Shown here in pieces: positions 5,999-55,518 of a DNA stretch of 64,000 nt. Location of the stretch: positions 1 to 64,000 of the IMG/VR virus record IMGVR_UViG_3300037294_000266; one strand, 5' to 3'. The notes beneath the pieces are model-generated. The model saw nothing but the letters and a program-made list of their open reading frames with translations, ran no database searches and was not told where the DNA came from. The translations under genes were made by a program, and so were the position numbers. How positions within the stretch are numbered: the stretch's first letter is position 1; each line of letters starts with the position of its first letter.

Positions 5999-6039
5999 AA
6001 CCAAAATAAAAGAAGGGGTGGGGCCGAAGCCCCACCTTA

Positions 6040-6603
6040 TCAATCCAGGCCAGGCACAGCCCAAGGCATCGCCTCAGACAATTTAACCCGACGCTTACCG
6101 CGATACTTCTTTACAGTCTTAGCACGTTCTGCGCATGCTGCTGCAATAGCCGTAACGTAACGGTTATCTTTATCACGGCTATTACCACCACAGAAGTAGA
6201 CAGCCGGGACCTCAGCCATCTTACCCACACAGACGTAGTAGTACTGTACTTTACCAGTATCGCGAACAGACACGCAGACACCAGGTTCACCTACCTTGAT
6301 GGCTTTGGTATCACGTTCATGCAGGACCCGTCGAGTACCCGGCGCCAATAACTCGCTGTTGGCGTACAGGCACTTCATAGCTTCTTTGTACGATTGAGCA
6401 GCAGTGCCATGAACACTGTCGTAAAAGACAGCGTTACTGATTGCCTTGGAATCGTTGTTACGAGACACCGTCCAACGATGCCGGCCTTTGGTATGATCAC
6501 GGTACAGTCCCTTTACCTTTGGAACAAGGCCGAGGTTCTGGATGAAGTAAGCAGTGCTGAGTACCATTACATCAGAAGCATTGGAGTCCATGTAAAACCT
6601 CAC
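6040..6603 (-). CDS. basic early protein, possible AP2-like DNA-binding domains
   Basis: Two beta-rich segments each followed by an amphipathic helix (SYKEAMKCL; AIAAACAER); downstream of early motif. Confidence 0.45.
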   Translation of the reverse strand: MRFYMDSNASDVMVLSTAYFIQNLGLVPKVKGLYRDHTKGRHRWTVSRNNDSKAISNAVFYDSVHGTAAQSYKEAMKCLYANSELLAPGTRRVLHERDTKAIKVGEPGVCVSVRDTGKVQYYYVCVGKMAEVPAVYFCGGNSRDKDNRYVTAIAAACAERAKTVKKYRGKRRVKLSEAMPWAVPGLD

Positions 6604-6644
6604 AGTGGTTATAAAGGGCTACTTCGGCAGCCCTTGTCATTAGT

Positions 6645-7919: not shown

Positions 7920-7986
7920 GGGAAGACTCCTTTGCTACATTGGTAGCGTGGGTTGTGTCACTTTAGTGACGGGTGGGTGTAACTGA

Positions 7987-8280
7987 TTAATCGTACGGCA
8001 GGAAATTGTTTATTGCTTTCCACCACGATTTAACATTGGCGAAGGTGGTCATGAAGCTGCCAATGTAAACTGCACTAGCAAACATCCAATGCTCTATCTC
8101 ACGACTATATGTCACCACGATAGCGGTAACGATACCCCATCCGATAAAGAGCATGATGAGTGTTATGCCAGAGGCCTTAGGAGGCGTTTGATTCAATAGG
8201 TAGCCTACGTGTAGGAAACCGTAGATGGCACACCATGTAAATACAACTGCTCCAATCAGGAGAATTACCCAAAGTTCCAT
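7987..8280 (-). CDS. small membrane protein (3 TM)
   Basis: Three hydrophobic segments. Confidence 0.65.
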   Translation of the reverse strand: MELWVILLIGAVVFTWCAIYGFLHVGYLLNQTPPKASGITLIMLFIGWGIVTAIVVTYSREIEHWMFASAVYIGSFMTTFANVKSWWKAINNFLPYD

Positions 8281-8288
8281 CGTTATTC

Positions 8289-8498
8289 CTAGGGAGGTGA
8301 GTTAAAGTACAGGGCGTATGCAATATACAAAACCCCCCATACAATACCCATGGCTACAGGCCATTCTAGAGCAGATATAACCACCCAACGCAACAGAGCG
8401 ACGCGAAGACCGACGATAGAAAACACCTGCCATTGAGACAGCGTCATCAATGTAGCAATGACCATCGCTATCGCCATCAATAAACCATTGTCAGTCAT
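8289..8498 (-). CDS. small membrane protein
   Basis: Hydrophobic 69 aa, tightly packed in operon. Confidence 0.55.
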   Translation of the reverse strand: MTDNGLLMAIAMVIATLMTLSQWQVFSIVGLRVALLRWVVISALEWPVAMGIVWGVLYIAYALYFNSPP

Positions 8499-27835: not shown

Positions 27836-29890
27836 ATGTACGCCAGCTTTTCACGACTACTAGGGATCATCTCCGTGAAGGAGACACCGACCCACATCGT
27901 CGTCAGTGGTGTTCCTGGCTTACGGTTGTCCAAAGACATTTATAATGCTTGGAAGACAGGTAAGATCAGTGCGAACCTATTCACTTCGGTTTCTCGGTCA
28001 TCGGTGAAGTTCCCTAAGTTCTATGCGATCGAGATGTTGTACATCCTCGAACACCTGATGCAGTCACGCCGTACCTTTGTAGGGCGCCGTACCCTCAGTA
28101 AGATTGTTGATGAAATGGTGGCCAATACTTGGCTGCATAACATCGGTGGTCAGGACTTCAAAGCACGACTCGATTATTCAAAGCTAGACGAGCTCAACGT
28201 AATCCTGTTCACCTATCAGCGGAAGTTTATTGAAACGTACGACTGGGTGACTTACAAGTACAATCTACTTGGCATGCTGATGGATGTGGCAGCAGGTGGT
28301 GGTAAGACCATTACCAACTACGCCCTTGGCCACTGCCTCAAATCAGACACCTGCATATACGTCGTCCCTAAGAACTCGGTGATTGACGTTTGGGTGAAGA
28401 CAATCAGGTCGTTGTTCAAGACGCCGCAGGACTACTGGTACAGTCTGAGTGGTGTGGAGCCTGAAGCCGGCAAGAAGCATTACATCGTCCATTTCGACTA
28501 CCTGGAGAAGTTCTTAGACTTCGCCAAGAAGAACAAGTCGAAGTTTGGTAAGGTATTCATTGCCATTGATGAGTCGCATAACTTCAACGAAGATTCTGCA
28601 CGTACACGCTTCTTAGTTGATCTCTGCCACACGACCGATGCACGTGATGTCATCCACGCTTCAGGCACTCCATTTAAAGCGATGGGTTCTGAAGCCATTA
28701 CCTTGCTTAAGACAGTCTGTGCAGACTTCACTCCCGAGGTCGAACAGTCGTTCCGTAAGTTGTTTGGTAAGGAGGCCAAGAAAGCCCTTGAGATCTTGGC
28801 TAACCGAATTGGCATCGTGTCGTTTAAGGTGCTCAAAGACGAAGTCGAGACTCCTGGTGTAGATTACTTCGAACGACGCATCAAGATCAAGAACGGCAGT
28901 GACTATACACTGACAGCCGTGCGGGATAAGATGTCTGCGTTCATTACTCAGCGCTTGGAGATGTACAAGAAGCAAATGCCTGAGCATGAACTTATGTACG
29001 GCACATGCCTCGATCTACATGCCAAAGCCATCGGCGGGAGTAGTGCCGCTGTTACTGCGTTCGGTGAGTATAAGCGTAACATTGCGATTCTCCGGAAAGG
29101 TTACGATCCTGTGACCATGAAAGACCTCGTGATGGCCTGTAACCGCTACGAACTCAAAGTAATTGTTCCATCGCTTCCAGATAAGTACCGTAAGCCGTTC
29201 CTTAATGTACGGGCTATCATTAAATACGTCGATCTGAAAGTAATGGGCGAGGCGTTGAGTCAGGTTCTAGGGCGTTTGCGTATTCAGTGTCATTTGGACA
29301 TGCTTCCTGAAATGCCTTTGGATGAGATCATCGATAACTCCAAGAGCAAGACAGTTATCTTTACCAGCTACGTAGAAGTGGTGAAGGAACTTGAGATTCG
29401 TCTGAAGGAAGCTGGTTATAAGCCTCTGGTGGTGTATGGAGAGACTAACAAGGATCTTCCAGCCATCGTCAAGAAGTTTGATAATGACCCTGATGCCAAT
29501 CCATTGATTGCGACATTCAAGAGCCTGTCTACGGCGGTACCGTTGGTTTCAGCTAGCACTGAGATATTCACGAACTCTCCATTCAGGGAGTACGAGCGTA
29601 CCCAGGCGGTTGCACGAGTGGATCGAGTGGGTCAGGTACATCGCTGCTCTATCTACGATACGTTCTTGGACACTGAGATGGATCCAAACATCTCTACCCG
29701 GTCTAAGGACATTCTGGCATGGAGCAAGCAACAGGTCGAGGCGATCCTTGGGGTGCAGACTCCCGATGATCTAGATGTCTCGTTAGAGAACCTGGCTGAA
29801 GTGGACGGTGTCGTGTCTCTGGAATCGGTAGATCGGTTCATTGAGACGTTGTATCTGACTTTCCCCATTGATGTCATTGTCGATCAGTAA
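27836..29890 (+). CDS. SF2 helicase
   Basis: AAGGGKT, DESH, SGTP, KTVIFT, QAVARVDRVGQ. Confidence 0.9.
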   Translation: MYASFSRLLGIISVKETPTHIVVSGVPGLRLSKDIYNAWKTGKISANLFTSVSRSSVKFPKFYAIEMLYILEHLMQSRRTFVGRRTLSKIVDEMVANTWLHNIGGQDFKARLDYSKLDELNVILFTYQRKFIETYDWVTYKYNLLGMLMDVAAGGGKTITNYALGHCLKSDTCIYVVPKNSVIDVWVKTIRSLFKTPQDYWYSLSGVEPEAGKKHYIVHFDYLEKFLDFAKKNKSKFGKVFIAIDESHNFNEDSARTRFLVDLCHTTDARDVIHASGTPFKAMGSEAITLLKTVCADFTPEVEQSFRKLFGKEAKKALEILANRIGIVSFKVLKDEVETPGVDYFERRIKIKNGSDYTLTAVRDKMSAFITQRLEMYKKQMPEHELMYGTCLDLHAKAIGGSSAAVTAFGEYKRNIAILRKGYDPVTMKDLVMACNRYELKVIVPSLPDKYRKPFLNVRAIIKYVDLKVMGEALSQVLGRLRIQCHLDMLPEMPLDEIIDNSKSKTVIFTSYVEVVKELEIRLKEAGYKPLVVYGETNKDLPAIVKKFDNDPDANPLIATFKSLSTAVPLVSASTEIFTNSPFREYERTQAVARVDRVGQVHRCSIYDTFLDTEMDPNISTRSKDILAWSKQQVEAILGVQTPDDLDVSLENLAEVDGVVSLESVDRFIETLYLTFPIDVIVDQ

Positions 29891-29986
29891 CAAAGAAAAA
29901 AGAAAAGGAGAGAGGGGCTGATGCCCCTCTCTTATTCCGTCATGCCCCATAAAGGATCGGGGCTGAGCTTTAAAGGACACCGGTGT

Positions 29987-30205
29987 TCATGCCAGCGACT
30001 CGATGAAGGTTAGATCAGTTTCTTCATCGACATCAACGTGCGTTTCGAGATAGGTAATCTCAGCAAGCAGCAGGTGACATTCGAGTACAGCAGCCTGCCC
30101 AAACATCTTGGAACGAACATCTCCTTCCCAGATAGTGTTCCGCAGTTCCTGGAAACGCTTCTTCTTTGTATCAATCAGCCGGAGCCGATAGTCATTGTTA
30201 GCCAT
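29987..30205 (-). CDS. hypothetical protein
   Basis: 72 aa, AGGAG RBS. Confidence 0.6.
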   Translation of the reverse strand: MANNDYRLRLIDTKKKRFQELRNTIWEGDVRSKMFGQAAVLECHLLLAEITYLETHVDVDEETDLTFIESLA

Positions 30206-31420: not shown

Positions 31421-31434
31421 GAACTATCCTCCTA

Positions 31435-31602
31435 TTAACGACTAGGCTTATTATAGCCAGGCACATCTTTAAGAAGAGGTTCTACGACCGCACGTACGCG
31501 CTCCATTTCAATCTTTTGCTTATTGTACTTGTCGTACAGGTAATAGCTTCCTGCACCGATAGCGGTTATAATGAGGGCAGTAGCAGCATTTTGAACGGAC
31601 AT
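31435..31602 (-). CDS. 55-aa early membrane-anchored protein (not in ORF track)
   Basis: MSVQNAATALIITAIGAGSYYLYDKYNKQKIEMERVRAVVEPLLKDVPGYNKPSR*; GGAG RBS; first gene after promoter 31643. Confidence 0.7.
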   Translation of the reverse strand: MSVQNAATALIITAIGAGSYYLYDKYNKQKIEMERVRAVVEPLLKDVPGYNKPSR

Positions 31603-31642
31603 GATAGTCTCCAAGACTTAGGTTATGTTTGGTACACATTGC

Positions 31643-31672
31643 TATCATGTATCTTTGAAAATAATTGGAATC
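31643..31672 (-). promoter_or_regulatory. putative early promoter
   Basis: GATTCCAATTATTTTCAAAGATACATGATA, 29/30 identical to 35127-35156. Confidence 0.7.
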
Positions 31673-31715
31673 TTGTCAATTCGGCATATAGAGGAGGGCA
31701 ACCGCCCTCCTCTAT

Positions 31716-32000
31716 TTATTCTGCTTTATTGGATGCGTTGACTAACTTGATTCGGTCGTTACATTCAGCAGTCACTTTGACTTGAGCTATGTAAGCGTCT
31801 GTCATCAACACGGTCTGTTCATCAGGATTCGCGTCAACATACCGACCTGCTTGAGGCGGAGGAACAATGTCGCAGTAGGGTACGCTACGGTATTGTTTGG
31901 TCTCGCACCCACCCAGTAAGAATAACACGGCGATTAACAGACAGACTGCCAAAGCCATGGAAGGGCGCTTAGGACCTCCTGTTAACGAAATGGCTTGCAT
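31716..32000 (-). CDS. o-spanin (Rz1-like lipoprotein)
   Basis: Lipobox LLGGC, Pro-rich segment, C-terminal helix; overlaps or abuts i-spanin. Confidence 0.7.
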   Translation of the reverse strand: MQAISLTGGPKRPSMALAVCLLIAVLFLLGGCETKQYRSVPYCDIVPPPQAGRYVDANPDEQTVLMTDAYIAQVKVTAECNDRIKLVNASNKAE

Positions 32001-33981: not shown

Positions 33982-34449
33982 ATGTCTCATCTCTATCACG
34001 GGTCGGGATACAAACAGACCGAACTGAAACCCGGTATCATGCACACAGGTGTATTGGTAGAGTGGGATAAAACGGAATCAAACGAATGGCTGTACGCCAC
34101 CGAACTAATGGAAGAAGCCATTGCTCAAGGCGTTGCGTCGACATTGGAGAAAACGTACAACCTGTCACGATATCGCTCTTCCGGCAATGAGATCATCATG
34201 ATCTTTGATGGAGCCGTTCCGACTCGCGCCATTCTTGATTCTCTGGAAGTCTATCTCTATAAGTTAGACTGGGCAAAGGACATGTGGGTCTCTGTCAATA
34301 ACCTCCATAATGGAATGGTTAACGAATATAAGACCAAGCAGGTTGTCAAGTCAGGGTTTATTGATTCGTGCGAAGCAGTTGATGTTAAGAAGTGGCTGTC
34401 CCGTAAGAAGGTAACTATCAAGGCCAAGACGGCTGCCATGAACTGGTAG
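33982..34449 (+). CDS. hypothetical protein, possible ADP-ribosyltransferase fold
   Basis: N-terminal LYHGS..LKPG, WLYAT and late NEY pattern; GAGGA RBS. Confidence 0.45.
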   Translation: MSHLYHGSGYKQTELKPGIMHTGVLVEWDKTESNEWLYATELMEEAIAQGVASTLEKTYNLSRYRSSGNEIIMIFDGAVPTRAILDSLEVYLYKLDWAKDMWVSVNNLHNGMVNEYKTKQVVKSGFIDSCEAVDVKKWLSRKKVTIKAKTAAMNW

Positions 34450-34498
34450 AACCAAAAAAAGAAAGCTAGAGGAGGCCCTAGGGCCTCCTCTTATGCTG

Positions 34499-35080
34499 TC
34501 AGTGGCCTTGCAAGTAAGCTTTGATACGATCGCTTGTAAGAACCGTAAGGTCGCGACTACCGAAGCGAGAGGCGCTTGTGGAGATACCTTGGAACTCACG
34601 CCCATCGAACACCACTGCACTCACATGCTGTTTGGTCACATGCATGATACCGTCATGACCATTCAGTACACATTTGTGCCATCCGCGACTGTGCTCCAAC
34701 TTACTACGATCGCCAAAGTCGGCCAAGGTAAGATCAACCACTTCAAGTCGACGAATCTCTTTCTGGAAATGAGACCAGAAGATTGGAGCAACCACTGGAC
34801 GTGCCCGCGCTACCGATAAGATAGAGTTTGGCCCGATAGGTTCAACGATATCTTCAACAGCCGCCGGTGTGACGACTACTTCAGGTTTCTCAACGATCTC
34901 CTCAACAGGCTCAATAACAACCTCCTCAACAGACGGCTTAGAGACAGTGTTAAGCGCTACAATCGCACCTTCAACCGAGCGCTTGGCCTTACCACGTTTC
35001 ATGAACTTGAGACTGACACCGCCAGCCACAACCGCAACCGCTACAACACCAACAGCAACAACAATAGGCTTGACCATCAC
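34499..35080 (-). CDS. early membrane-anchored protein
   Basis: N-terminal TM followed by KFMKRGK; first gene after promoter 35127. Confidence 0.7.
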   Translation of the reverse strand: MMVKPIVVAVGVVAVAVVAGGVSLKFMKRGKAKRSVEGAIVALNTVSKPSVEEVVIEPVEEIVEKPEVVVTPAAVEDIVEPIGPNSILSVARARPVVAPIFWSHFQKEIRRLEVVDLTLADFGDRSKLEHSRGWHKCVLNGHDGIMHVTKQHVSAVVFDGREFQGISTSASRFGSRDLTVLTSDRIKAYLQGH

Positions 35081-35498: not shown

Positions 35499-36119
35499 TT
35501 ACCCCTGTAATGAAAATGACCACGTAACCGCTTTCAAGGCGATACGGTCATCGGCAGCAACGGCTGCCAACATTTGTTTCTCAGCGCCGTGGCGGCGGGC
35601 TGTGATGGTTGCCAACGCTGGGCTGAAGATCGCATCATTGGTCAGTACTCGTTCAGCAAGACCATATATCCCGCCTGAAATACCTTCCATAGTGCGTTGA
35701 GCAGCAAGATCATAGATGAACGGCGCTAAGGCCCGTGGGAAGTCCTCGACCAGTCGAGTATCGTCCTCAGCCAACCAGGCCATCAATTTGACGGATTCAT
35801 CACGCTGGATAGACCACGTAATCACTTCAGACAATGGATAGGTCTGCTTCAAATACGCCACCATTATCTCGTAATCATTGTTCATGACTGCTAAGATGTT
35901 CTGATAGACACTCTGGATACTGGCTACTGGGAATGGGGTATCTGGCGCGCGTGTACTTGGAACATTACCCACACCTGCCTCGAGTATCCGGCCTTCCATC
36001 ATTTCTTGACGAAGTTCTTCAAACCGTTCTTCAGTCACCTCGACTGCATCTACCCAGATTTTGTTATCTTTGTTAAAAACCAATCGACTCGGAGAGAAAT
36101 AATACACTGGCGTCACCAT
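35499..36119 (-). CDS. tail fibre assembly protein; paralog of 52997..53584
   Basis: YFSPS, YPxxE..TW..Q..E, RVL.N..I.SP, TA.RH..E, TWSF shared. Confidence 0.75.
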   Translation of the reverse strand: MVTPVYYFSPSRLVFNKDNKIWVDAVEVTEERFEELRQEMMEGRILEAGVGNVPSTRAPDTPFPVASIQSVYQNILAVMNNDYEIMVAYLKQTYPLSEVITWSIQRDESVKLMAWLAEDDTRLVEDFPRALAPFIYDLAAQRTMEGISGGIYGLAERVLTNDAIFSPALATITARRHGAEKQMLAAVAADDRIALKAVTWSFSLQG

Positions 36120-36159
36120 TAGATAAAGTTTAAATCTATAGGATAGGTACTACAAAAAT

Positions 36160-36960
36160 AAAAGAAAAAAGGCTTTGGGGTAACTCTTTGGCTAGCGAGC
36201 CCAGGGATGATCAATCCCCAGTCGTTAGCAATCTAAGAGTTCCCCGTGACCCTACAACATGACACTGACCTAAGACGGCCTTGGATTAAAATCCAATAAG
36301 TTCGAACTTAATCGATTTGAGTTTGGTTCGGTCTGTTTATACCGAGACTAGTCTTAGCTAACGAGTACCTTAAACACGCGCTTTGAGTCCTCTCGGTTGC
36401 TGAGGCTGCAATACTGAAACCCAGTGTGGCACACAATCCAATCAGACGATCGCCGTTCGAAGTTCCCACCTGCTCGTTCTTTTACAAACGAGTGCGAACG
36501 AATGATCCATTTCCACAGATCATCTTCCGAGTATGGGTTATCTTGAGGGGCTTCGGCTGATGAAGTTTTCCAGTACTGGACTGGTTCTTCGATGGCGCAT
36601 GCGACACTACAGTTCAGTAAGGCAGCGAGAGCAATTGCTCCGATGCTGATCGTTAACGCTCCATGGTCCGGGTTGGGATTGATCTTCTCGTCAGTATACT
36701 GGTAATACAGCTCACGGGAGCCACCCTTACGACCGCCTTATGATCGTGGGTGGCGGCGATGCCTGTTAGTGCGCTGATGGAGATGCCTGTAGATCGTAGA
36801 GGGGTCAGCTTAGCCAGAGGCCCCAGCCTCAAACTGCCAATCGAACGCACCAGCGATACAACTCGCCAGATTGTACGTGACCAAAATAGACTTCCAAGTA
36901 ACCCACCTGAGAGGAATCCGAACATTGCTGTCCTTATGATTCAGTTATCGGGAGTTTCAC
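36160..36960 (-). ncRNA. candidate ~800-nt multi-domain structured non-coding RNA
   Basis: Largest gene-free gap; more than 12 stems including a long-range 13-bp helix; GNRA loops on minus strand; TATG at 36960-36963; terminal stem plus U-tract. Confidence 0.65.
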
Positions 36961-36996
36961 ATAGATCATGTAACTATCGTAAATAAATACGGATGG

Positions 36997-37521
36997 TTAG
37001 GATAGCTGGGTTACTTCTGGGAACAAGACATTGAGCTTAGCGACGATGAAGTCAATCTTCATGGTCGTAAAGCCAGAACCGTTGGATACCCCCTGCTCAT
37101 TGAACTGTTTAAAGGTATCGTCATCAGAGAGACCTGCCGCGAGTATTGCCGCGATTAAGTCTCGATTGTACTCGCTATCGCTCATTGCCCAACTCACACC
37201 CAAGCCCTGAGGCAATGAATGGACATCGACTGTGTATGATTTATCATCGTCAATGTATATATCCGCTTGCCACAGCGCACCGTGTCTGTCGATGATCAGA
37301 GATGCTGATGTCGTTGATGTTTTGTACCACGTGTCGAATAGTACTCTACCTTCCAGAACTGAAGGCAGATCTGGACCGAGTCCGGTTAACGGATAGATAA
37401 ACCCATGGCGCGTGAAGAACTGATTTTCAGAAGATCCAGCTACCTTTATAGATAGACCTTCCCGAATTGGAGGAATGTTACTAAAACCGATTTTACCATC
37501 CCGGTAGAACAGCGTCATCAT
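36997..37521 (-). CDS. degenerate Ntn-hydrolase/proteasome-beta-like paralog
   Basis: MTLFYRDGKI N-terminus and AILAAGLSDDDTF helix mirror the upstream gene. Confidence 0.45.
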   Translation of the reverse strand: MMTLFYRDGKIGFSNIPPIREGLSIKVAGSSENQFFTRHGFIYPLTGLGPDLPSVLEGRVLFDTWYKTSTTSASLIIDRHGALWQADIYIDDDKSYTVDVHSLPQGLGVSWAMSDSEYNRDLIAAILAAGLSDDDTFKQFNEQGVSNGSGFTTMKIDFIVAKLNVLFPEVTQLS

Positions 37522-38045
37522 TCACCTCCCTTAATAACAAACTGTTTAAGTCGTGTAGTATCGATCGTGTCGAACGTCGAACCAGAGAGGTAATCTAGAG
37601 TGGGCAAGCGTTTGAAGGCTTCGTTAGGAGTCAGACCACAGCGCAATAGAGAAGCAAGCATGGGCCCGCCGGTACCACAGGCATGAGTCTTACCGTCCAG
37701 ACGTACGACGAAAACAATCCCAGTGTCTTTTAAGGCATACTGAACATTCTTTGTACAGATTATTGCGTTGGTGAAATCAATGTCATTCCCGTGGCTGAGG
37801 TTGAGATCAGTTAATTTGATACAGTCTCGACCATTCAGATACATGGCTGTTATAAGTGCTCGAAACAAGGACTCGTACTTGTCGCGATTAAGTTCGGTAA
37901 CTGATTTACCCGAAACCGCATATGCGAAAGATTTGTCTTTACTGATAAGGACCTTCTCCCCATCAATGAAAGTAACGGGAGTAGTGAAAGAAACTTGCTT
38001 CCGATCGCCGTATATTTTACCCTGGTGAAATACGATAGCTGTCAT
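37518..38045 (-). CDS. HslV/proteasome-beta-like Ntn hydrolase
   Basis: MTAIVFHQGKIYGDRK (Thr2, D-R), K near position 30, ACGTGG, GLTPNEA...D.LSG. Confidence 0.6.
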   Translation of the reverse strand: MTAIVFHQGKIYGDRKQVSFTTPVTFIDGEKVLISKDKSFAYAVSGKSVTELNRDKYESLFRALITAMYLNGRDCIKLTDLNLSHGNDIDFTNAIICTKNVQYALKDTGIVFVVRLDGKTHACGTGGPMLASLLRCGLTPNEAFKRLPTLDYLSGSTFDTIDTTRLKQFVIKGGE

Positions 38046-41474: not shown

Positions 41475-41500
41475 GGTGTATTTCCTTGGTTGATGGCTAG

Positions 41501-41770
41501 TTATTTGCCATTGTTGGTGCGGTCGAAATATTTATCGAGCTTATTGTACAGCTTTTGTTTAGCTGGAGTGAGACGTTTACTGATGCCCTCTGGCTGATTA
41601 TTCTGAGGGTTCCAGTAAACATCGCGTAGACACGTGTGCGCGTTGAGTAAGCGGACACGATACATCTGGTCGAGGGGTCGGCCAGTACGAGTGTCTTTAT
41701 CGTACTTCAGTCGAGTGAGACCCTCACTTCCAACATATTGGAAATGTTTCTTACCTAAACGAATACACAT
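41501..41770 (-). CDS. hypothetical basic protein
   Basis: 89 aa, operon packing. Confidence 0.55.
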   Translation of the reverse strand: MCIRLGKKHFQYVGSEGLTRLKYDKDTRTGRPLDQMYRVRLLNAHTCLRDVYWNPQNNQPEGISKRLTPAKQKLYNKLDKYFDRTNNGK

Positions 41771-44198: not shown

Positions 44199-44263
44199 GA
44201 TAGTCCCGATTCATAATGATAGCACATCGCCATACAGGGCAGGGGATTCCCCTGCCCTGTCTA

Positions 44264-45391
44264 TCATGGAACGCCCGGTGCACCCAGGGTGTGAAACTCA
44301 CCGTCGATGTCTAAGAAGTACGCTGTATTGCTTACACTGTCCTTATAAATAAGACCACGTTGCAGCGCACTTTCATTATCCATCGTGCCGGCATTGACCC
44401 AGGCATTGTTCTGCCAGCGCCAGACGACACCGTTACTGTTATCAATGATCTCGGACTTAACCATAGGCACTGAAACATTTTCCCACGTAGCACCCGCTTG
44501 GGACATAGCCACATAACCAATGGCGCATGGGGACAAGAAGATATCTGGAATAGCCCCTGTCCAGTAAACGGGAGTGGGCCATGGAGAACCGTCTGCTTTA
44601 GTCACCTCGATCTCAAATGTCTTATCGATCTTACGCTTAGCTACAACCCGAACGCCAAGACTTAGATCGACACCCACATCCCATGTTTGATTAACTATAC
44701 CAAGATTGGTAGAGAAAATAACATTCATACTAGGACGAGGATTGTTATAGACCAGACGAGCCTTGGCCTGTCCCGATGGCAAACCACCACCATCGACTAC
44801 AAGCATCAGCGTGTGTTCGACAGCCCCTACTTTCTTGTAAGCCAACATGATACCAATGGCGTCATCGTCAGCCACATTAGAAGACATAATGACTTCAAAG
44901 TTGTAGGTGTCAAAACGATCGTTGCTGATAAGACCTATAAGGCTCGTAGAATTCAGTGTCGAAGAGACTTTGTCCGTTGATGCATTGTACGACCAGCCAT
45001 CGAGTTCAGCTGGGATGGAGGGACTGGTCTCGGTGATGCCGTGACTGATTCGTTTCCATTTATCAAACACGTCAGCGAATGAGATGGTGGCAGCTTTTAA
45101 ACTATCAGCCTCAGCAGTCGTTGCAGCTATTCGAACAGTCTTGAACAATTGCATCGCCTTGAATGACATCGCCACGCCTTCTTGTTCGAAGACTGCTACT
45201 TCACCAGGTCTGCCGTTAATAGTTGCCAACTCATTGGAGATCACATCAGCACGCACTTCAGCAGCAGTCTTCCCCTCTAGCAGCGCCGAGTCGGCGGCTT
45301 GAGCGTCGACATCTAGCTTGCCGGTGAACGTGGAGTGAAGTCGCTTGAGCAGTGTGTCCAGTTTAGAGGACAGTGCGGATATACTAGCCAT
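44264..45391 (-). CDS. tail fibre/adhesin with lectin-like domain
   Basis: N-terminal KLDVDAQAADSALLEGKT shared with long fibre; FEV...DDDAIG recalls the thrombospondin C-terminal lectin motif. Confidence 0.65.
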   Translation of the reverse strand: MASISALSSKLDTLLKRLHSTFTGKLDVDAQAADSALLEGKTAAEVRADVISNELATINGRPGEVAVFEQEGVAMSFKAMQLFKTVRIAATTAEADSLKAATISFADVFDKWKRISHGITETSPSIPAELDGWSYNASTDKVSSTLNSTSLIGLISNDRFDTYNFEVIMSSNVADDDAIGIMLAYKKVGAVEHTLMLVVDGGGLPSGQAKARLVYNNPRPSMNVIFSTNLGIVNQTWDVGVDLSLGVRVVAKRKIDKTFEIEVTKADGSPWPTPVYWTGAIPDIFLSPCAIGYVAMSQAGATWENVSVPMVKSEIIDNSNGVVWRWQNNAWVNAGTMDNESALQRGLIYKDSVSNTAYFLDIDGEFHTLGAPGVP

Positions 45392-45464
45392 GATTTCCTC
45401 AAGAAAGAGTCACTAGAGTCATAACATGACACAAAAAATAAAGGAGGGGCCGAAGCCCCTCATT

Positions 45465-54791: not shown

Positions 54792-54875
54792 GAGGTATAC
54801 CTCTAATTAAACAAAAAAGAAAGGATCGTCATAGGATAGAACAAAAAAGAAAAGGATAGACTAGTCTCCTTTTCT

Positions 54876-55085
54876 TTATGCATTGAAGCGATAGACAGAC
54901 TTCTGAACAGCAAAAGTCATGTTATTCCACAGTTCAATATGAATACCAGCATCGCTGATAGCAATGTCCAAGATGACCTGAGCAGACAGTTTCTTAGCGA
55001 TGATGATGGCAGTCAGTTTATCAACGCCTGCTTTGATAAGAGCAGTTACGTTTTCCAACATACGAGTTTGTTTGATAGTGTACAT
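54876..55085 (-). CDS. small early protein
   Basis: AGGAG RBS, 69 aa. Confidence 0.65.
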   Translation of the reverse strand: MYTIKQTRMLENVTALIKAGVDKLTAIIIAKKLSAQVILDIAISDAGIHIELWNNMTFAVQKSVYRFNA

Positions 55086-55147
55086 GATGAATCTCCTTTA
55101 AGCGCATAAAAGAGAGAGTGGAAATCCACTCTCTCTAGATTTAGATG

Positions 55148-55258
55148 TTACTTGGTAGCTAGAGCATCCTCTAGCAACTTACTTTGCTTTACAATGACCT
55201 GATGGCCCATGTATGCAATGATACCGCCGATAGTAAAACCGATGATAAATTTAGTCAT
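55148..55258 (-). CDS. 36-aa membrane peptide (not in ORF track)
   Basis: MTKFIIGFTIGGIIAYMGHQVIVKQSKLLEDALATK*; AGGAG RBS. Confidence 0.7.
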   Translation of the reverse strand: MTKFIIGFTIGGIIAYMGHQVIVKQSKLLEDALATK

Positions 55259-55269
55259 GTCAATACTCC

Positions 55270-55389
55270 TTATTCTGAAATAGTTTTGCTTACAGCAGCC
55301 AGTGCATCATGAATAGCCTTGTTACGAGACTGTTCAGTGATACCCACGACAACCCAGTAGCCAACAATAATACCTAGAAATACTTTCAT
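55270..55389 (-). CDS. 39-aa membrane peptide (not in ORF track)
   Basis: MKVFLGIIVGYWVVVGITEQSRNKAIHDALAAVSKTISE*; AGGAG RBS; first gene after promoter 55441. Confidence 0.7.
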   Translation of the reverse strand: MKVFLGIIVGYWVVVGITEQSRNKAIHDALAAVSKTISE

Positions 55390-55440
55390 ACTGATCTCCT
55401 AGACCACGGTTAGAGGAAGATCGTTCTTCCTATTCACCTG

Positions 55441-55470
55441 TACTATGTATTGTTGAAATAAATTCGAATC
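55441..55470 (-). promoter_or_regulatory. putative early promoter
   Basis: TTCGAA-N13-TACATA. Confidence 0.7.
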
Positions 55471-55518
55471 GCATTTCTAGAATTCTATGGGGTTGGTGTT
55501 TAATCGAGAGGATTCAAA

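What the first reader, a model, noticed from the sequence alone, without database searches (positions are those of the whole stretch)
36160..36960. Candidate ~800-nt multi-domain structured RNA of unrecognised family
Seen: the largest gene-free gap is paired along most of its length. Stems: a long-range 13-bp helix (36894-36906 with 36533-36546, one bulge, G-U pairs on minus) closing a ~350-nt domain that contains GTGCG/CGCAC, GGGG/CCCC, GCCACCC/GGGTGGC (36720-36726/36748-36754) and CAGC..GAGCAATTGCTC..GCTG; AUGAUCUGU-GGAA-AUGGAUCAU (36502-36523, GNRA loop); CGTTCG/CGAACG around CTCGTT/AACGAG; a multibranch closed by CTAAGAC/GTCTTAG (36270/36351) holding three hairpins; and a terminal ~70-nt stem (36177-36245) followed by a U-tract. 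TATG at 36960-36963 marks a plausible 5' end. Some wobbles favour the plus strand, so strand is likely but not certain. Known: the size matches large phage/bacterial ncRNAs (GOLLD, ROOL, OLE), but I see no diagnostic motif of those, tmRNA, RNase P or introns. A 90-codon ORF (36653..36925) with an AAGGA RBS overlaps the 5' part, so dual function is possible.
Basis: partly seen in the sequence, partly recalled or inferred. Interest (0 to 1): 0.88.

Follow-up and report, generated by a model that had tools for sequence, protein, structure and literature searches.

The report
Hidden two-gene phage cassette, AUC start
The "gene-free" 880-base gap of this jumbo phage is most likely one short transcript with two small protein genes that gene finders miss, the second (an exported protein) apparently starting at AUC or AUA instead of AUG in all 14 related phages, plus a few conserved RNA hairpins, so it is not a giant non-coding RNA.

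Summary
The gap (36120-36996, minus strand) is real and is the largest uncovered stretch of the window. The same ~0.9-1.0 kb module occurs at the syntenic place in 14 related jumbo-phage sequences, including cultured Pseudomonas phage pPa_SNUABM_DT01.

Every copy has the same layout:
- a promoter-like block ending in (C)TATG;
- ORF A (64-123 codons; window 36925-36653), with a Shine-Dalgarno (SD) site and an ATG or TTG start;
- hairpin H1 (36754-36720), with a UAAGG loop and covarying stem;
- ORF B (98-109 codons; window 36650-36354);
- a 180-320-nt hairpin-rich 3' UTR that ends in a long terminator stem plus U-tract.

ORF B is open in all copies, scores far better in frame than off frame, has dN/dS mostly 0.2-0.8, and always begins with a signal-peptide-like hydrophobic segment. 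It never has ATG, GTG or TTG at its start. Instead, GGAG or AAGGAG sits 5-8 nt upstream of ATC (12 copies) or ATA (2 copies).

Its long-range helix is not conserved, there is no Rfam match, and the core is coding. Verdict: an unannotated bicistronic mRNA with a conserved near-cognate start and embedded RNA elements, not an 800-nt ncRNA. Interest is moderate.

The parts
36960..36990 (-). Promoter-like block: AT-rich GTATTTATTTACG (36990-36978), then (C)TATG (36964-36960), about 25 nt upstream of the ORF A SD site. Inferred transcription start region.
   Evidence: An AT-rich ...ACG element followed by (C)TATG lies at the same place in all lineages, and the block is near-identical in W, L014 and L016. 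Function is inferred, not shown.
36653..36935 (-). ORF A with its SD site: AAGGA 36935-36931, ATG 36925, stop TAA 36655-36653; 90 aa. A small, fast-evolving protein with a hydrophobic N-terminus.
   Evidence: A 64-123-codon ORF with an SD site and ATG or TTG sits at the homologous position in all 14 copies. dN/dS is 0.27-0.73 in eight of ten pairs. The AAG of the H1 loop is in the ORF A frame in 12 of 13 copies checked. It is annotated as PA10_00292 in phage DT01.
36720..36754 (-). Hairpin H1, inside the 3' part of ORF A: outer stem 36754-36748 with 36726-36720, inner stem 36747-36742 with 36734-36729, 7-nt loop AUAAGGC 36741-36735 (SD-like).
   Evidence: RNAfold predicted it in all 8 copies folded, and a complementary stem around the same loop was read in the 5 copies found later. 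The inner stem is 96% paired, 5 of 6 pairs change on both sides, and the covariation score is 0.76 against 0.24 in shuffles (0 of 500 reach it). The loop lies 88-111 nt upstream of the ORF B start in every copy measured. It is the only such hairpin in the 64-kb window. The structure conservation index around it is 0.91-0.95, against 0.52 +/- 0.17 in coding flanks.
36354..36662 (-). ORF B with its SD site: GGAG 36662-36659, an 8-nt spacer, inferred start ATC 36650-36648, stop TAA 36356-36354; 98 aa. A small protein with an N-terminal signal peptide or membrane anchor.
   Evidence: The frame is open for 98-109 codons after the AUH codon in all 14 copies; P(open) is 0.003-0.04 per lineage. In-frame BLOSUM score is 145 against 49 and 59 off frame (W-L014), and 94 against 32 and 49 (L019-L010). 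dN/dS is 0.22-0.89. The most hydrophobic 12-mer is always at residues 1-9. GGAG or AAGGAG lies 5-8 nt before ATC or ATA in every copy, and the window has no ATG, GTG or TTG before codon 72. It is the only long start-less open frame in an uncovered gap of the window.
36502..36523 (-). Hairpin inside ORF B: a 9-bp stem with a GGAA loop.
   Evidence: L014 and L016 keep 8 of 9 pairs, and their loop is UUCG instead of GGAA. The DT01-type clade has a hairpin at the equivalent codons by my own reading of the sequences. This is a weaker case than H1.
36341..36397 (-). End of ORF B: helix ACCGAGA..ACU (36397-36386) with AGUCUCGGU (36349-36341), enclosing an H2-like hairpin (36378-36362) whose loop again holds UAAGG, and the stop codon.
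   Evidence: An inverted repeat in the window. The block CCGAGAGGACU..AAGCGCGUG is identical in W, L014 and DT01 although DT01 reads it in a different frame. H2 has 6-bp stems and a UAAGG loop in L014 and L025. A hairpin with an unrelated stem and an AUAAGGU loop sits at the same place in L019.
36267..36345 (-). 3' UTR string of small hairpins: 36345-36328, the motif hairpin 36315-36302 holding CGAUUAAGUUCG (36314-36303), 36296-36281 and 36280-36267.
   Evidence: The 12-mer is present, exactly or with 1-2 changes, in all lineages. In the W clade the hairpins at these positions persist with different sequences. The function of the 12-mer is unknown.
36154..36253 (-). Extended intrinsic terminator: outer helix AGGGU (36253-36249) with GCCUU (36173-36169), main stem GGGG 36245-36242 to CCCC 36180-36177 enclosing about 60 nt, then a U-rich tail to about 36154.
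   Evidence: Five consecutive pairs are changed on both sides in DT01 against the W clade. The same GGUYACGGGG...CCCC base and CUUUAUUUUUUG-type tail occur in the other lineages. The same tail follows an ordinary GGGGCUUCGGCCCC terminator at about 45444 (minus strand).
36136..36146 (-). CTATCCTATAG, just downstream of the terminator: the likely promoter element of the next gene. It is not part of the transcript but marks the end of the module.
   Evidence: A (A/T)TYCTATAG block is conserved after the U-tract in W, L014, L016, L019 and L025-L028. Function is inferred.

Best explanation
The gap is an independent, conserved transcription unit of a DT01-like clade of jumbo phages. It is an mRNA of about 800 nt that runs from a conserved AT-rich/(C)TATG promoter-like block to an unusually long intrinsic terminator, and it encodes two small, fast-evolving proteins.

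ORF A (90 aa here) starts at a normal SD-AUG. ORF B (98 aa here) is an exported or membrane-anchored protein with an N-terminal signal peptide or anchor. I infer that its translation starts at a conserved near-cognate AUC or AUA codon, placed 5-8 nt after a strong SD site. That start explains why gene finders either leave the region empty or call only a C-terminal fragment from an internal Met.

RNA elements are embedded in this mRNA. H1 is a covarying two-tier hairpin that shows an SD-like UAAGG in its loop at a fixed 88-111 nt upstream of the ORF B start. There are one or two further hairpins inside ORF B. The 3' UTR is rich in hairpins, carries the near-invariant CGAUUAAGUUCG and ends in the terminator stem.

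Most likely mode of action (inferred): the weak start codon together with the strong SD site keeps ORF B output low, or makes it depend on initiation-factor stringency (IF3-type discrimination of AUH codons). H1 and translation of ORF A through it modulate ribosome access to ORF B. The 3' structures set the 3' end and the stability of the RNA.

Shown here: conservation, coding signatures, covariation of H1 and of the terminator. Inferred: transcript ends, the AUH start, export, and any regulation.
For: Synteny and recurrence: 14 module copies sit between homologues of the same flanking genes.

ORF B coding signal:
- It is open in all copies, with P(open) 0.003-0.04 per lineage.
- The in-frame similarity score far exceeds the off-frame scores.
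- dN/dS is 0.22-0.55 in nine of ten pairs and 0.22-0.79 in a second, overlapping set of ten.
- The hydrophobic maximum is always at the N-terminus, and the DT01/L025 clade has textbook n-h-c signal peptides ending in AxA.

Start codon: GGAG, AAGGAG or AAGGAGG lies 5-8 nt before ATC (12 copies) or ATA (2 copies). In-frame stops or 1-nt indels just upstream in L016, L018 and L010 exclude upstream starts. The window has no canonical start before codon 72. Public gene calls for this protein all begin at an internal Met and lack the signal peptide.

ORF A: an SD site plus ATG or TTG and an open frame in all copies, with its frame locked to H1.

RNA elements: H1 covariation, terminator covariation, and a raised structure conservation index only around H1 and in the 3' UTR.

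Uniqueness: this is the only start-less long open frame in an uncovered gap of the window.
Against: There is no experimental evidence for the transcript, for translation or for the AUH start. AUC and AUA are very rare bacterial start codons.

The coding signal has weak spots:
- One pair (L017-L018) has dN/dS 0.89 and flat codon-position differences, 17/16/13.
- ORF B similarity between the three clades is not significant by sequence, so homology across clades rests on position, length and topology.
- ORF A shows no frame preference in L019-L010.

ORF B has no homologue with a known function, by HMMER over 1.8 billion representatives, Pfam, PHROGs and PDB sequences. AlphaFold gives no confident fold, pLDDT 51.

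Some conserved nucleotide blocks are read in different frames in different phages (W against DT01 at the end of ORF B). RNA- or DNA-level constraints therefore overlap the coding sequence.
Confidence: 0.72

Rival explanations
1. One reading: a ~800-nt non-coding, multi-domain structured RNA of a new family, with the ORFs incidental.
For: Several hairpins are conserved and covary. The structure conservation index around H1 and in the 3' UTR exceeds that of coding flanks. Fold z is -2.3. ORF B has no canonical start codon. Some conserved blocks ignore the reading frame.
Against: Two reading frames are kept open in 14 diverged copies. ORF B scores far better in frame than off frame and has dN/dS below 1, and every copy keeps a hydrophobic signal-like N-terminus right after an SD site. 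There is no Rfam hit. The domain-closing helix is not conserved. The structure conservation index across ORF B equals that of the flanks.
Confidence: 0.07
2. Dual-function RNA. The bicistronic mRNA, or a stable 3' fragment that ends at the terminator, also acts as a regulatory RNA. The near-invariant CGAUUAAGUUCG loop would be the base-pairing seed or a protein-binding site, and the UAAGG loops would be ribosome or protein binding sites. This adds to the best explanation rather than excluding it.
For: The 12-mer is the most conserved sequence of the module across all lineages. H1 and H2 present SD-like UAAGG in 7-nt loops and occur nowhere else in 64 kb. The 3' UTR keeps a conserved hairpin architecture despite sequence turnover.
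Against: No conserved target was found. The exact 12-nt antisense match inside the HslV-like gene of the window (37885-37896) is absent from relatives. The 12-mer hairpin has only a 4-bp stem and one covarying pair. Strong 3' UTR structure may serve stability and termination only.
Confidence: 0.2
3. Decaying pseudogene, a frameshifted single gene, or programmed frameshift or read-through joining ORF A to ORF B.
For: The window shows pieces in two frames: ORF A in frame 0 overlaps ORF B's upstream open stretch, which is in the -1 frame. In L019 the two ORFs are in the same frame, separated by one TAA.
Against: The frame relation of A to B is -1 in the window, 0 in L019 and +1 in L010. The spacing from the ORF A stop to the ORF B start ranges from -95 to +76 nt. 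Both ORFs are intact in 14 copies, with their own SD sites. An independently assembled contig (L005) is 100% identical to the window, so this is not an assembly error.
Confidence: 0.03
4. ORF B is translated from an internal canonical codon, as the gene callers assume, and gives a cytoplasmic protein without a signal peptide.
For: Public annotations start at an internal Met in several lineages. DT01 has an in-frame ATG 8 codons after the AUC.
Against: The internal codons are not at homologous positions, lack SD sites and fall within or after the hydrophobic segment. In the window the first canonical codon leaves only 26 aa. The SD site and the signal-like segment upstream are conserved at the protein level.
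Confidence: 0.05

Closest known systems
Near-cognate AUU-start genes of E. coli (infC/IF3 and pcnB), and in-vitro work on AUU/AUA initiation (PMC5499595)
   Same: An AUH codon is conserved as the start within an otherwise good initiation region. From established knowledge, IF3 discriminates against such codons, so their output depends on initiation stringency. PMC5499595 reports that an AUA mRNA with an optimised initiation region can be translated well in vitro and that non-AUG starts are sensitive to nutrient state and ppGpp.
   Different: Here the codon is AUC or AUA, not AUU. The gene is a phage gene for an exported protein, not an initiation factor or poly(A) polymerase. No feedback loop is evident, and initiation at this codon is inferred, not shown.
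Large structured ncRNAs of phages and bacteria (GOLLD, ROOL, OLE)
   Same: Similar size (about 800 nt), location in a large phage genome, apparent lack of a gene, and many hairpins.
   Different: No covariance-model match. Two conserved ORFs with coding signatures fill about 570 of the ~800 nt. No conserved long-range helices.
Small exported or membrane-anchored phage accessory proteins (for example T4 RI antiholin, Imm/Sp-type exclusion proteins; comparison from memory)
   Same: About 100 aa, an N-terminal signal or anchor segment followed by a small periplasmic part, and rapid sequence turnover.
   Different: No detectable sequence or profile similarity to any PHROG, Pfam or PDB entry. No fold could be predicted. 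The genomic context is not a recognisable lysis cassette. The function is untested.
Translational operator hairpins and dual-function mRNAs (RNA-phage operator hairpins; SgrS/SgrT, RNAIII; 3'UTR-derived sRNAs; from memory)
   Same: A covarying hairpin with a conserved loop lies inside a coding region at a fixed distance from the next cistron's start. The structured 3' UTR shares the mRNA terminator.
   Different: No binding partner, processing site or target is known. The H1 loop is not the ribosome binding site of ORF B itself.
Csr/Rsm-titrating RNAs (RsmY/RsmZ type)
   Same: Repeated hairpin loops carry a purine-rich AAGG core.
   Different: The defining GGA triplet is absent: the loops read AAGGC, AAGGU or AAGGG in 12 of 13 copies. 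There are only one or two such loops per RNA.

Membership tests
Rfam large ncRNAs (GOLLD, ROOL, OLE and all other Rfam 15 families) | Match to the family covariance model | tested here: not met
   cmscan of the whole window at gathering thresholds, and of 35900-37200 at E <= 10, gave 0 matches.
Non-coding RNA in general | No reading frame conserved under selection | tested here: not met
   ORF A and ORF B are open in 14 copies. ORF B scores 145 in frame against 49 and 59 off frame, and dN/dS is 0.22-0.89.
Non-coding RNA in general | Conserved secondary structure with covariation along most of its length | tested here: not met
   Covariation was found only for H1, the terminator stem and a few local hairpins. 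The long-range helix keeps 6-7 of 13 pairs. The structure conservation index over ORF B is 0.17-0.62, like the coding flanks.
Bacterial/phage protein-coding gene (ORF B) | Shine-Dalgarno site at the correct spacing | tested here: met
   GGAG, AAGGAG or AAGGAGG lies 5-8 nt upstream of the inferred start in all 14 copies.
Bacterial/phage protein-coding gene (ORF B) | Canonical start codon (ATG, GTG or TTG) | tested here: not met
   ATC in 12 copies and ATA in 2. No canonical codon lies at or upstream of the hydrophobic segment in the window, L016, L018, L019 or L010.
Bacterial/phage protein-coding gene (ORF B) | Purifying selection at the amino-acid level | tested here: met
   dN/dS is 0.22-0.55 in nine of ten pairs and 0.22-0.79 in a second, overlapping set of ten. 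One pair reaches 0.89, so the selection is relaxed.
Sec-type signal peptide or signal-anchor protein | N-terminal n-h-c organisation: basic residues, a 10-15-residue hydrophobic core, a small-x-small cleavage motif | tested here: inconclusive
   The hydrophobic maximum is at residues 1-9 in all 14 copies. The DT01/L025-L028 copies have R/K n-regions and VQA, AQA or ANA before the mature part. The window copy lacks a basic n-region. No dedicated predictor was available and export was not tested.
Intrinsic (factor-independent) terminator | G+C-rich stem followed directly by a U-tract, at the 3' end of a transcription unit | tested here: met
   The GGGG...CCCC stem has 5 consecutive compensatory pairs and a conserved U-rich tail, which it shares with an ordinary terminator at about 45444. 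It is atypical in two ways: the stem-loop is 60-130 nt long and a 6-8-nt spacer precedes the Us. The simple scanner did not list it.
IF3-discriminated near-cognate start (infC-like regulation) | An AUH start codon conserved across homologues | tested here: met
   ATC or ATA at the homologous codon in 14 of 14 copies.
IF3-discriminated near-cognate start (infC-like regulation) | Expression responds to IF3 level or initiation stringency | not testable with these tools
   This needs reporter assays.
Csr/Rsm sponge RNA | Several hairpin loops with the GGA core (ANGGA) | tested here: not met
   The H1 loop is (A/U)UAAGG(C/U/G); GGA occurs only in L029 and L031.
tRNA, tmRNA, CRISPR or other repeat array | ARAGORN hit or a repeat family | tested here: not met
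   No tRNA or tmRNA in the window, and no meaningful direct repeats in 35900-37200.

The most novel reading that the evidence does not exclude
A clade of Pseudomonas-type jumbo phages maintains a dedicated regulatory mRNA design. An exported accessory protein is initiated at a conserved AUC or AUA codon, making it a sensor of initiation stringency or IF3 activity during infection. It is coupled to a covarying hairpin that displays an SD-like UAAGG loop at a fixed distance upstream, which could be a ribosome standby or decoy site or a protein operator. The 3' UTR carries a near-invariant 12-nt loop that acts in trans. In this reading the RNA is both a messenger and a regulator, and the start-codon choice is a conserved control device not yet described in phages.
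Probability: 0.2. Interest if true: 0.7.

Novelty: new variant of a known kind. Interest (0 to 1): 0.45.

Why it matters
There are three reasons.

1. Annotation. A gene conserved in at least 14 jumbo-phage genomes is missing from their annotation or, in public protein sets, truncated at an internal Met. That includes the cultured phage DT01, where 640 nt are left blank. The cause is that gene finders allow only ATG, GTG and TTG. "Gene-free" gaps in phage genomes should be checked for an SD site followed by an AUH codon before they are called ncRNAs.

2. Biology. Verified AUC or AUA initiation is very rare in bacteria. A start of this kind that is conserved across deep divergence and paired with a strong SD site suggests selected low or conditional expression of an exported phage protein. 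This is directly testable in a laboratory host-phage pair, P. aeruginosa and DT01.

3. RNA elements. H1 and the CGAUUAAGUUCG motif are new, well-defined RNA elements, with covariation (H1) or near-invariance (the motif), whose partners are unknown.

Tried and rejected
- Rfam at gathering thresholds and at E <= 10: nothing. ARAGORN: nothing. Repeats and simple promoter/terminator scans: nothing informative.
- blastn and megablast of the gap and of 14 kb around it against 50,697 phage records: no match. tblastn of the 127-codon piece: none.
Pfam and PHROGs gave nothing. An exhaustive HMMER search of the 127-aa piece against 1.8 billion representatives gave only three spurious repeat hits.
- Programmed frameshift or read-through joining ORF A to ORF B: rejected, because the frame relation is -1, 0 and +1 in different lineages.
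- Assembly error: rejected, because an independently assembled contig is 100% identical.
- Hammerhead-like CUGAUGAG/CUGACGAG between H1 and ORF B: no stem II or GAAA arrangement and no Rfam hit, so dropped.
- Csr/Rsm sponge: the GGA core is missing.
- tRNA-like T-arm reading of GUUCGAA in the 12-mer: the consensus is not kept in relatives and ARAGORN is negative.
- The 12-nt antisense match in the HslV-like gene as a target: not conserved.
- AlphaFold2 of ORF B with a 12-sequence alignment: pLDDT 51 and pTM 0.20, so no fold search was run. PDB profile search and Pfam on all members: nothing.
Full report
**1. What the window is.**
Flanking proteins place the window in IMG/VR contig IMGVR_UViG_3300037294_000266, a 266.6-kb jumbo phage. 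Genes around the finding lie on the minus strand. Its closest cultured relative is Pseudomonas phage pPa_SNUABM_DT01, with 55% identity for the 620-aa neighbour. The stretch 36120-36996 is the largest part of the window not covered by a canonical ORF of at least 100 aa.

**2. Check of the observation.**
The statistics are modest.
- The 816-nt fold has z = -2.3 on either strand, from 20 shuffles.
- 200-nt windows across 26-47 kb average -0.75 +/- 1.3. Within the gap only the windows starting at 36100 and 36300 (both strands), 36200 and 36900 (plus strand only) stand out, while those starting at 36400-36800 are ordinary.
- Rfam gives nothing at gathering scores or at E <= 10. There are no tRNAs, tmRNA or repeats.

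**3. Relatives.**
The phage database has no nucleotide match. This gave 14 copies of the module in about six lineages:
- W (the window), L014 (identical to L015) and L016;
- DT01 and L025-L028;
- L019 (identical to L004 and L020);
- L010 (identical to L013);
- L017 and L018;
- L029 and L031.

In each, gene callers left 0.6-1.0 kb empty or called only scraps. Extra genes are inserted at the module borders in some phages: a P-loop gene upstream in L010, and a 206-aa gene downstream in the window whose DT01 homologue sits elsewhere. The module therefore behaves as a self-contained unit.

**4. Anatomy shared by all copies.**
1. An AT-rich ...TTTACG/AAATACG element, then (C)TATG (window 36990-36960).
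2. AAGGA plus ATG or TTG, opening ORF A (64-123 codons; window 36925-36653).
3. Hairpin H1, near the 3' part of ORF A (window 36754-36720).
4. GGAG or AAGGAG, a 5-8-nt spacer, then ATC or ATA, opening ORF B (98-109 codons; window 36650-36354).
5. A 180-320-nt 3' region with several small hairpins, including the near-invariant CGATTAAGTTCG (window 36314-36303).
6. A long stem GGUYACGGGG...CCCC followed by a U-rich tail (window 36253-36154). The same tail follows an ordinary GGGGCUUCGGCCCC terminator elsewhere in the window.
7. A CTATAG-type block that probably starts the next unit (36146-36136).

**5. ORF B is protein-coding.**
- The frame is open in all 14 copies. After shuffling, the chance of an open frame is 0.003-0.04 per lineage, so the joint chance over five saturated lineages is about 1e-10.
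- Within clades, the in-frame translation aligns far better than the other two frames: 145 against 49 and 59 for W-L014, and 94 against 32 and 49 for L019-L010.
- dN/dS is 0.22-0.55 in nine of ten pairs and 0.89 in L017-L018. A second, overlapping set of ten pairs gave 0.22-0.79.
- The most hydrophobic 12-mer is at residues 1-9 in every copy. The DT01 and L025-L028 proteins start with textbook signal peptides: a basic n-region, a hydrophobic core, then VQA, AQA or ANA.
- RNA structure conservation over ORF B is no higher than in flanking genes.

Caveats:
- Between clades the proteins are only 13-24% identical, and pairwise scores are not significant.
- One pair shows flat codon-position differences.
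- No homologue of known function exists, and AlphaFold gives pLDDT 51.

**6. The start codon.**
No copy has ATG, GTG or TTG where the protein must begin.
- In the window the first canonical codon is codon 72 of 98.
- In L016, L018 and L010 an in-frame stop lies 3-9 codons upstream of the AUH codon. L014 and L016 differ by a 1-nt indel just before the SD site, so the upstream stretch is not coding.
- The one constant is a strong SD site 5-8 nt before ATC (12 copies) or ATA (L019, L010).
- Public protein sets hold this protein only as fragments that start at an internal Met without the signal peptide.
- The ORF B segment is the only long start-less open frame in an uncovered part of the window, so this is not a general habit of the phage.

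I therefore infer initiation at AUC or AUA. It is known that AUH codons can initiate and are sensitive to IF3 and to growth state (infC and pcnB from memory; PMC5499595). Conserved AUC or AUA starts are very unusual.

**7. ORF A.**
An SD site with ATG or TTG and an open frame are kept in all copies, even where the sequence has turned over almost completely. L017 and L018 are 48% identical here, against 85% in ORF B. dN/dS is 0.27-0.73 in eight of ten pairs. The AAG in the H1 loop is read in the ORF A frame in 12 of 13 copies checked. DT01 annotates ORF A as PA10_00292. L019-L010 shows no frame preference. ORF A is thus a translated, poorly constrained small protein or leader-type ORF.

A frameshift or read-through fusion of A to B is excluded. 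The frame relation is -1, 0 and +1 in different lineages, and the spacing varies from -95 to +76 nt.

**8. RNA elements that are really conserved.**
- **H1.** It is a two-tier hairpin with a 7-nt loop, consensus (A/U)UAAGG(C/U). On a 19-nt ungapped alignment of 10 copies the inner stem is 96% paired, and 5 of 6 pairs show changes on both sides. The covariation score is 0.76 against 0.24 in shuffles (0 of 500 reach it), and the slid controls score 0.04-0.34. It lies 88-111 nt upstream of the ORF B start in all copies measured. It is unique in the 64-kb window. It sits in the only coding part with a structure conservation index above the flank distribution: 0.91-0.95 against 0.52 +/- 0.17.
- **H2.** A second hairpin with a UAAGG loop lies near the end of ORF B in L014, L025 and L019, and less perfectly in the window.
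- **The 36502-36523 hairpin.** It is kept in L014 and L016 with a GGAA to UUCG loop change.
- **The terminal stem.** It has five consecutive compensatory pairs between the W clade and DT01.
- **The 12-mer CGAUUAAGUUCG.** It is kept almost unchanged in all lineages, but its hairpin has only 4 bp and one covarying pair, so its constraint is on sequence.

**9. Mechanism.**
Best-supported reading: a short bicistronic mRNA with its own promoter and terminator.

Steps shown: conservation of the unit, coding signatures of both ORFs, the SD-AUH arrangement, and covariation of H1 and of the terminator.

Steps inferred:
- transcription from the (C)TATG block;
- initiation at AUC or AUA;
- export of ORF B;
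- low or conditional ORF B output, set by a weak codon with a strong SD site;
- modulation by H1 and by ORF A translation;
- 3' structures that give termination and stability.

A trans-acting role of the 3' UTR or of the 12-mer is possible but unsupported. The one perfect antisense match (37885-37896) is not conserved.

**10. Comparison, novelty and verdict.**
This is not a member of any Rfam family and not a large ncRNA. It works like an ordinary small phage operon, with two unusual features: a conserved near-cognate AUH start, and embedded covarying hairpins with SD-like loops. I rate it a new variant of a known kind, with interest about 0.45. It corrects the annotation of a whole phage clade and gives a testable case of conserved AUC/AUA initiation, but it is not the new giant RNA that was proposed.

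Noticed in passing
window 37885-37896 (+ strand, inside the minus-strand HslV-like gene 37518-38045): An exact second copy of CGATTAAGTTCG in the opposite orientation, so the 3' UTR loop of the module is perfectly complementary to 12 nt of the mRNA two genes upstream. About 0.008 exact matches are expected by chance. It is not present in the HslV-like genes of L010, L016 or DT01, so it is probably chance.
   Followed up: yes
window 35499-36119 (-); L010 10533-10964; L001 (DT01) 6007-6624: The borders of the module are insertion points for extra genes. A 206-aa gene follows the terminator in the window, and its DT01 homologue lies about 20 kb away in a different context. A P-loop (GFPGIGMT) gene sits between the 174-aa gene and the module in L010 and L007-L009.
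   Followed up: partly
window about 45415-45444 (-): A classic terminator, GGGGCTTCGGCCCC, followed by TCCTTTATTTTTTG. The same U-rich tail ends the module, which suggests a common terminator tail in this phage group (also L010 at about 1065).
   Followed up: partly
window 41500-41700, 34400-34600, 44200-44400, 29800-30100, 31600-31800: 200-nt windows with fold z-scores of -4 to -5.4, some on both strands. These are stronger than anything in the finding. They lie at gene junctions and may be terminators or other structured elements.
   Followed up: no
window 7920-8498, 31421-31981, 54792-55518: Three further stretches of 560-730 nt without a canonical ORF of at least 100 aa. None holds a long start-less open frame like ORF B, but they were not examined for small genes or RNAs.
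   Followed up: no
window 36136-36146 (-) and the equivalent position in L014, L016, L019, L025-L028: A conserved (A/T)TYCTATAG block 10-25 nt after the module's U-tract, resembling the (C)TATG block at the module's start. Together they suggest a TCTAT(A/G)-type promoter core for this phage clade.
   Followed up: partly
P0018-P0024; L016 3591-3791; L017 2025-2279; L031 1501-1746: Public gene calls for ORF B homologues all start at an internal Met and lack the signal peptide. This is a systematic mis-annotation caused by the non-canonical start.
   Followed up: yes
L029 2149-2520 (ORF A): In L029, ORF A runs on for 123 codons and overlaps ORF B by 95 nt in another frame. In the near relative L031 it stops after 73 codons. 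The H1 loop in these two copies reads CGUUGGA instead of UAAGG.
   Followed up: partly
window 37518-38045 (-): The 175-aa protein two genes upstream matches the PHROG 'peptidase HslV family' (E = 2e-8) and is annotated as a putative HslV-type protease in DT01. An AAA ATPase gene lies nearby in relatives but not in the window.
   Followed up: no
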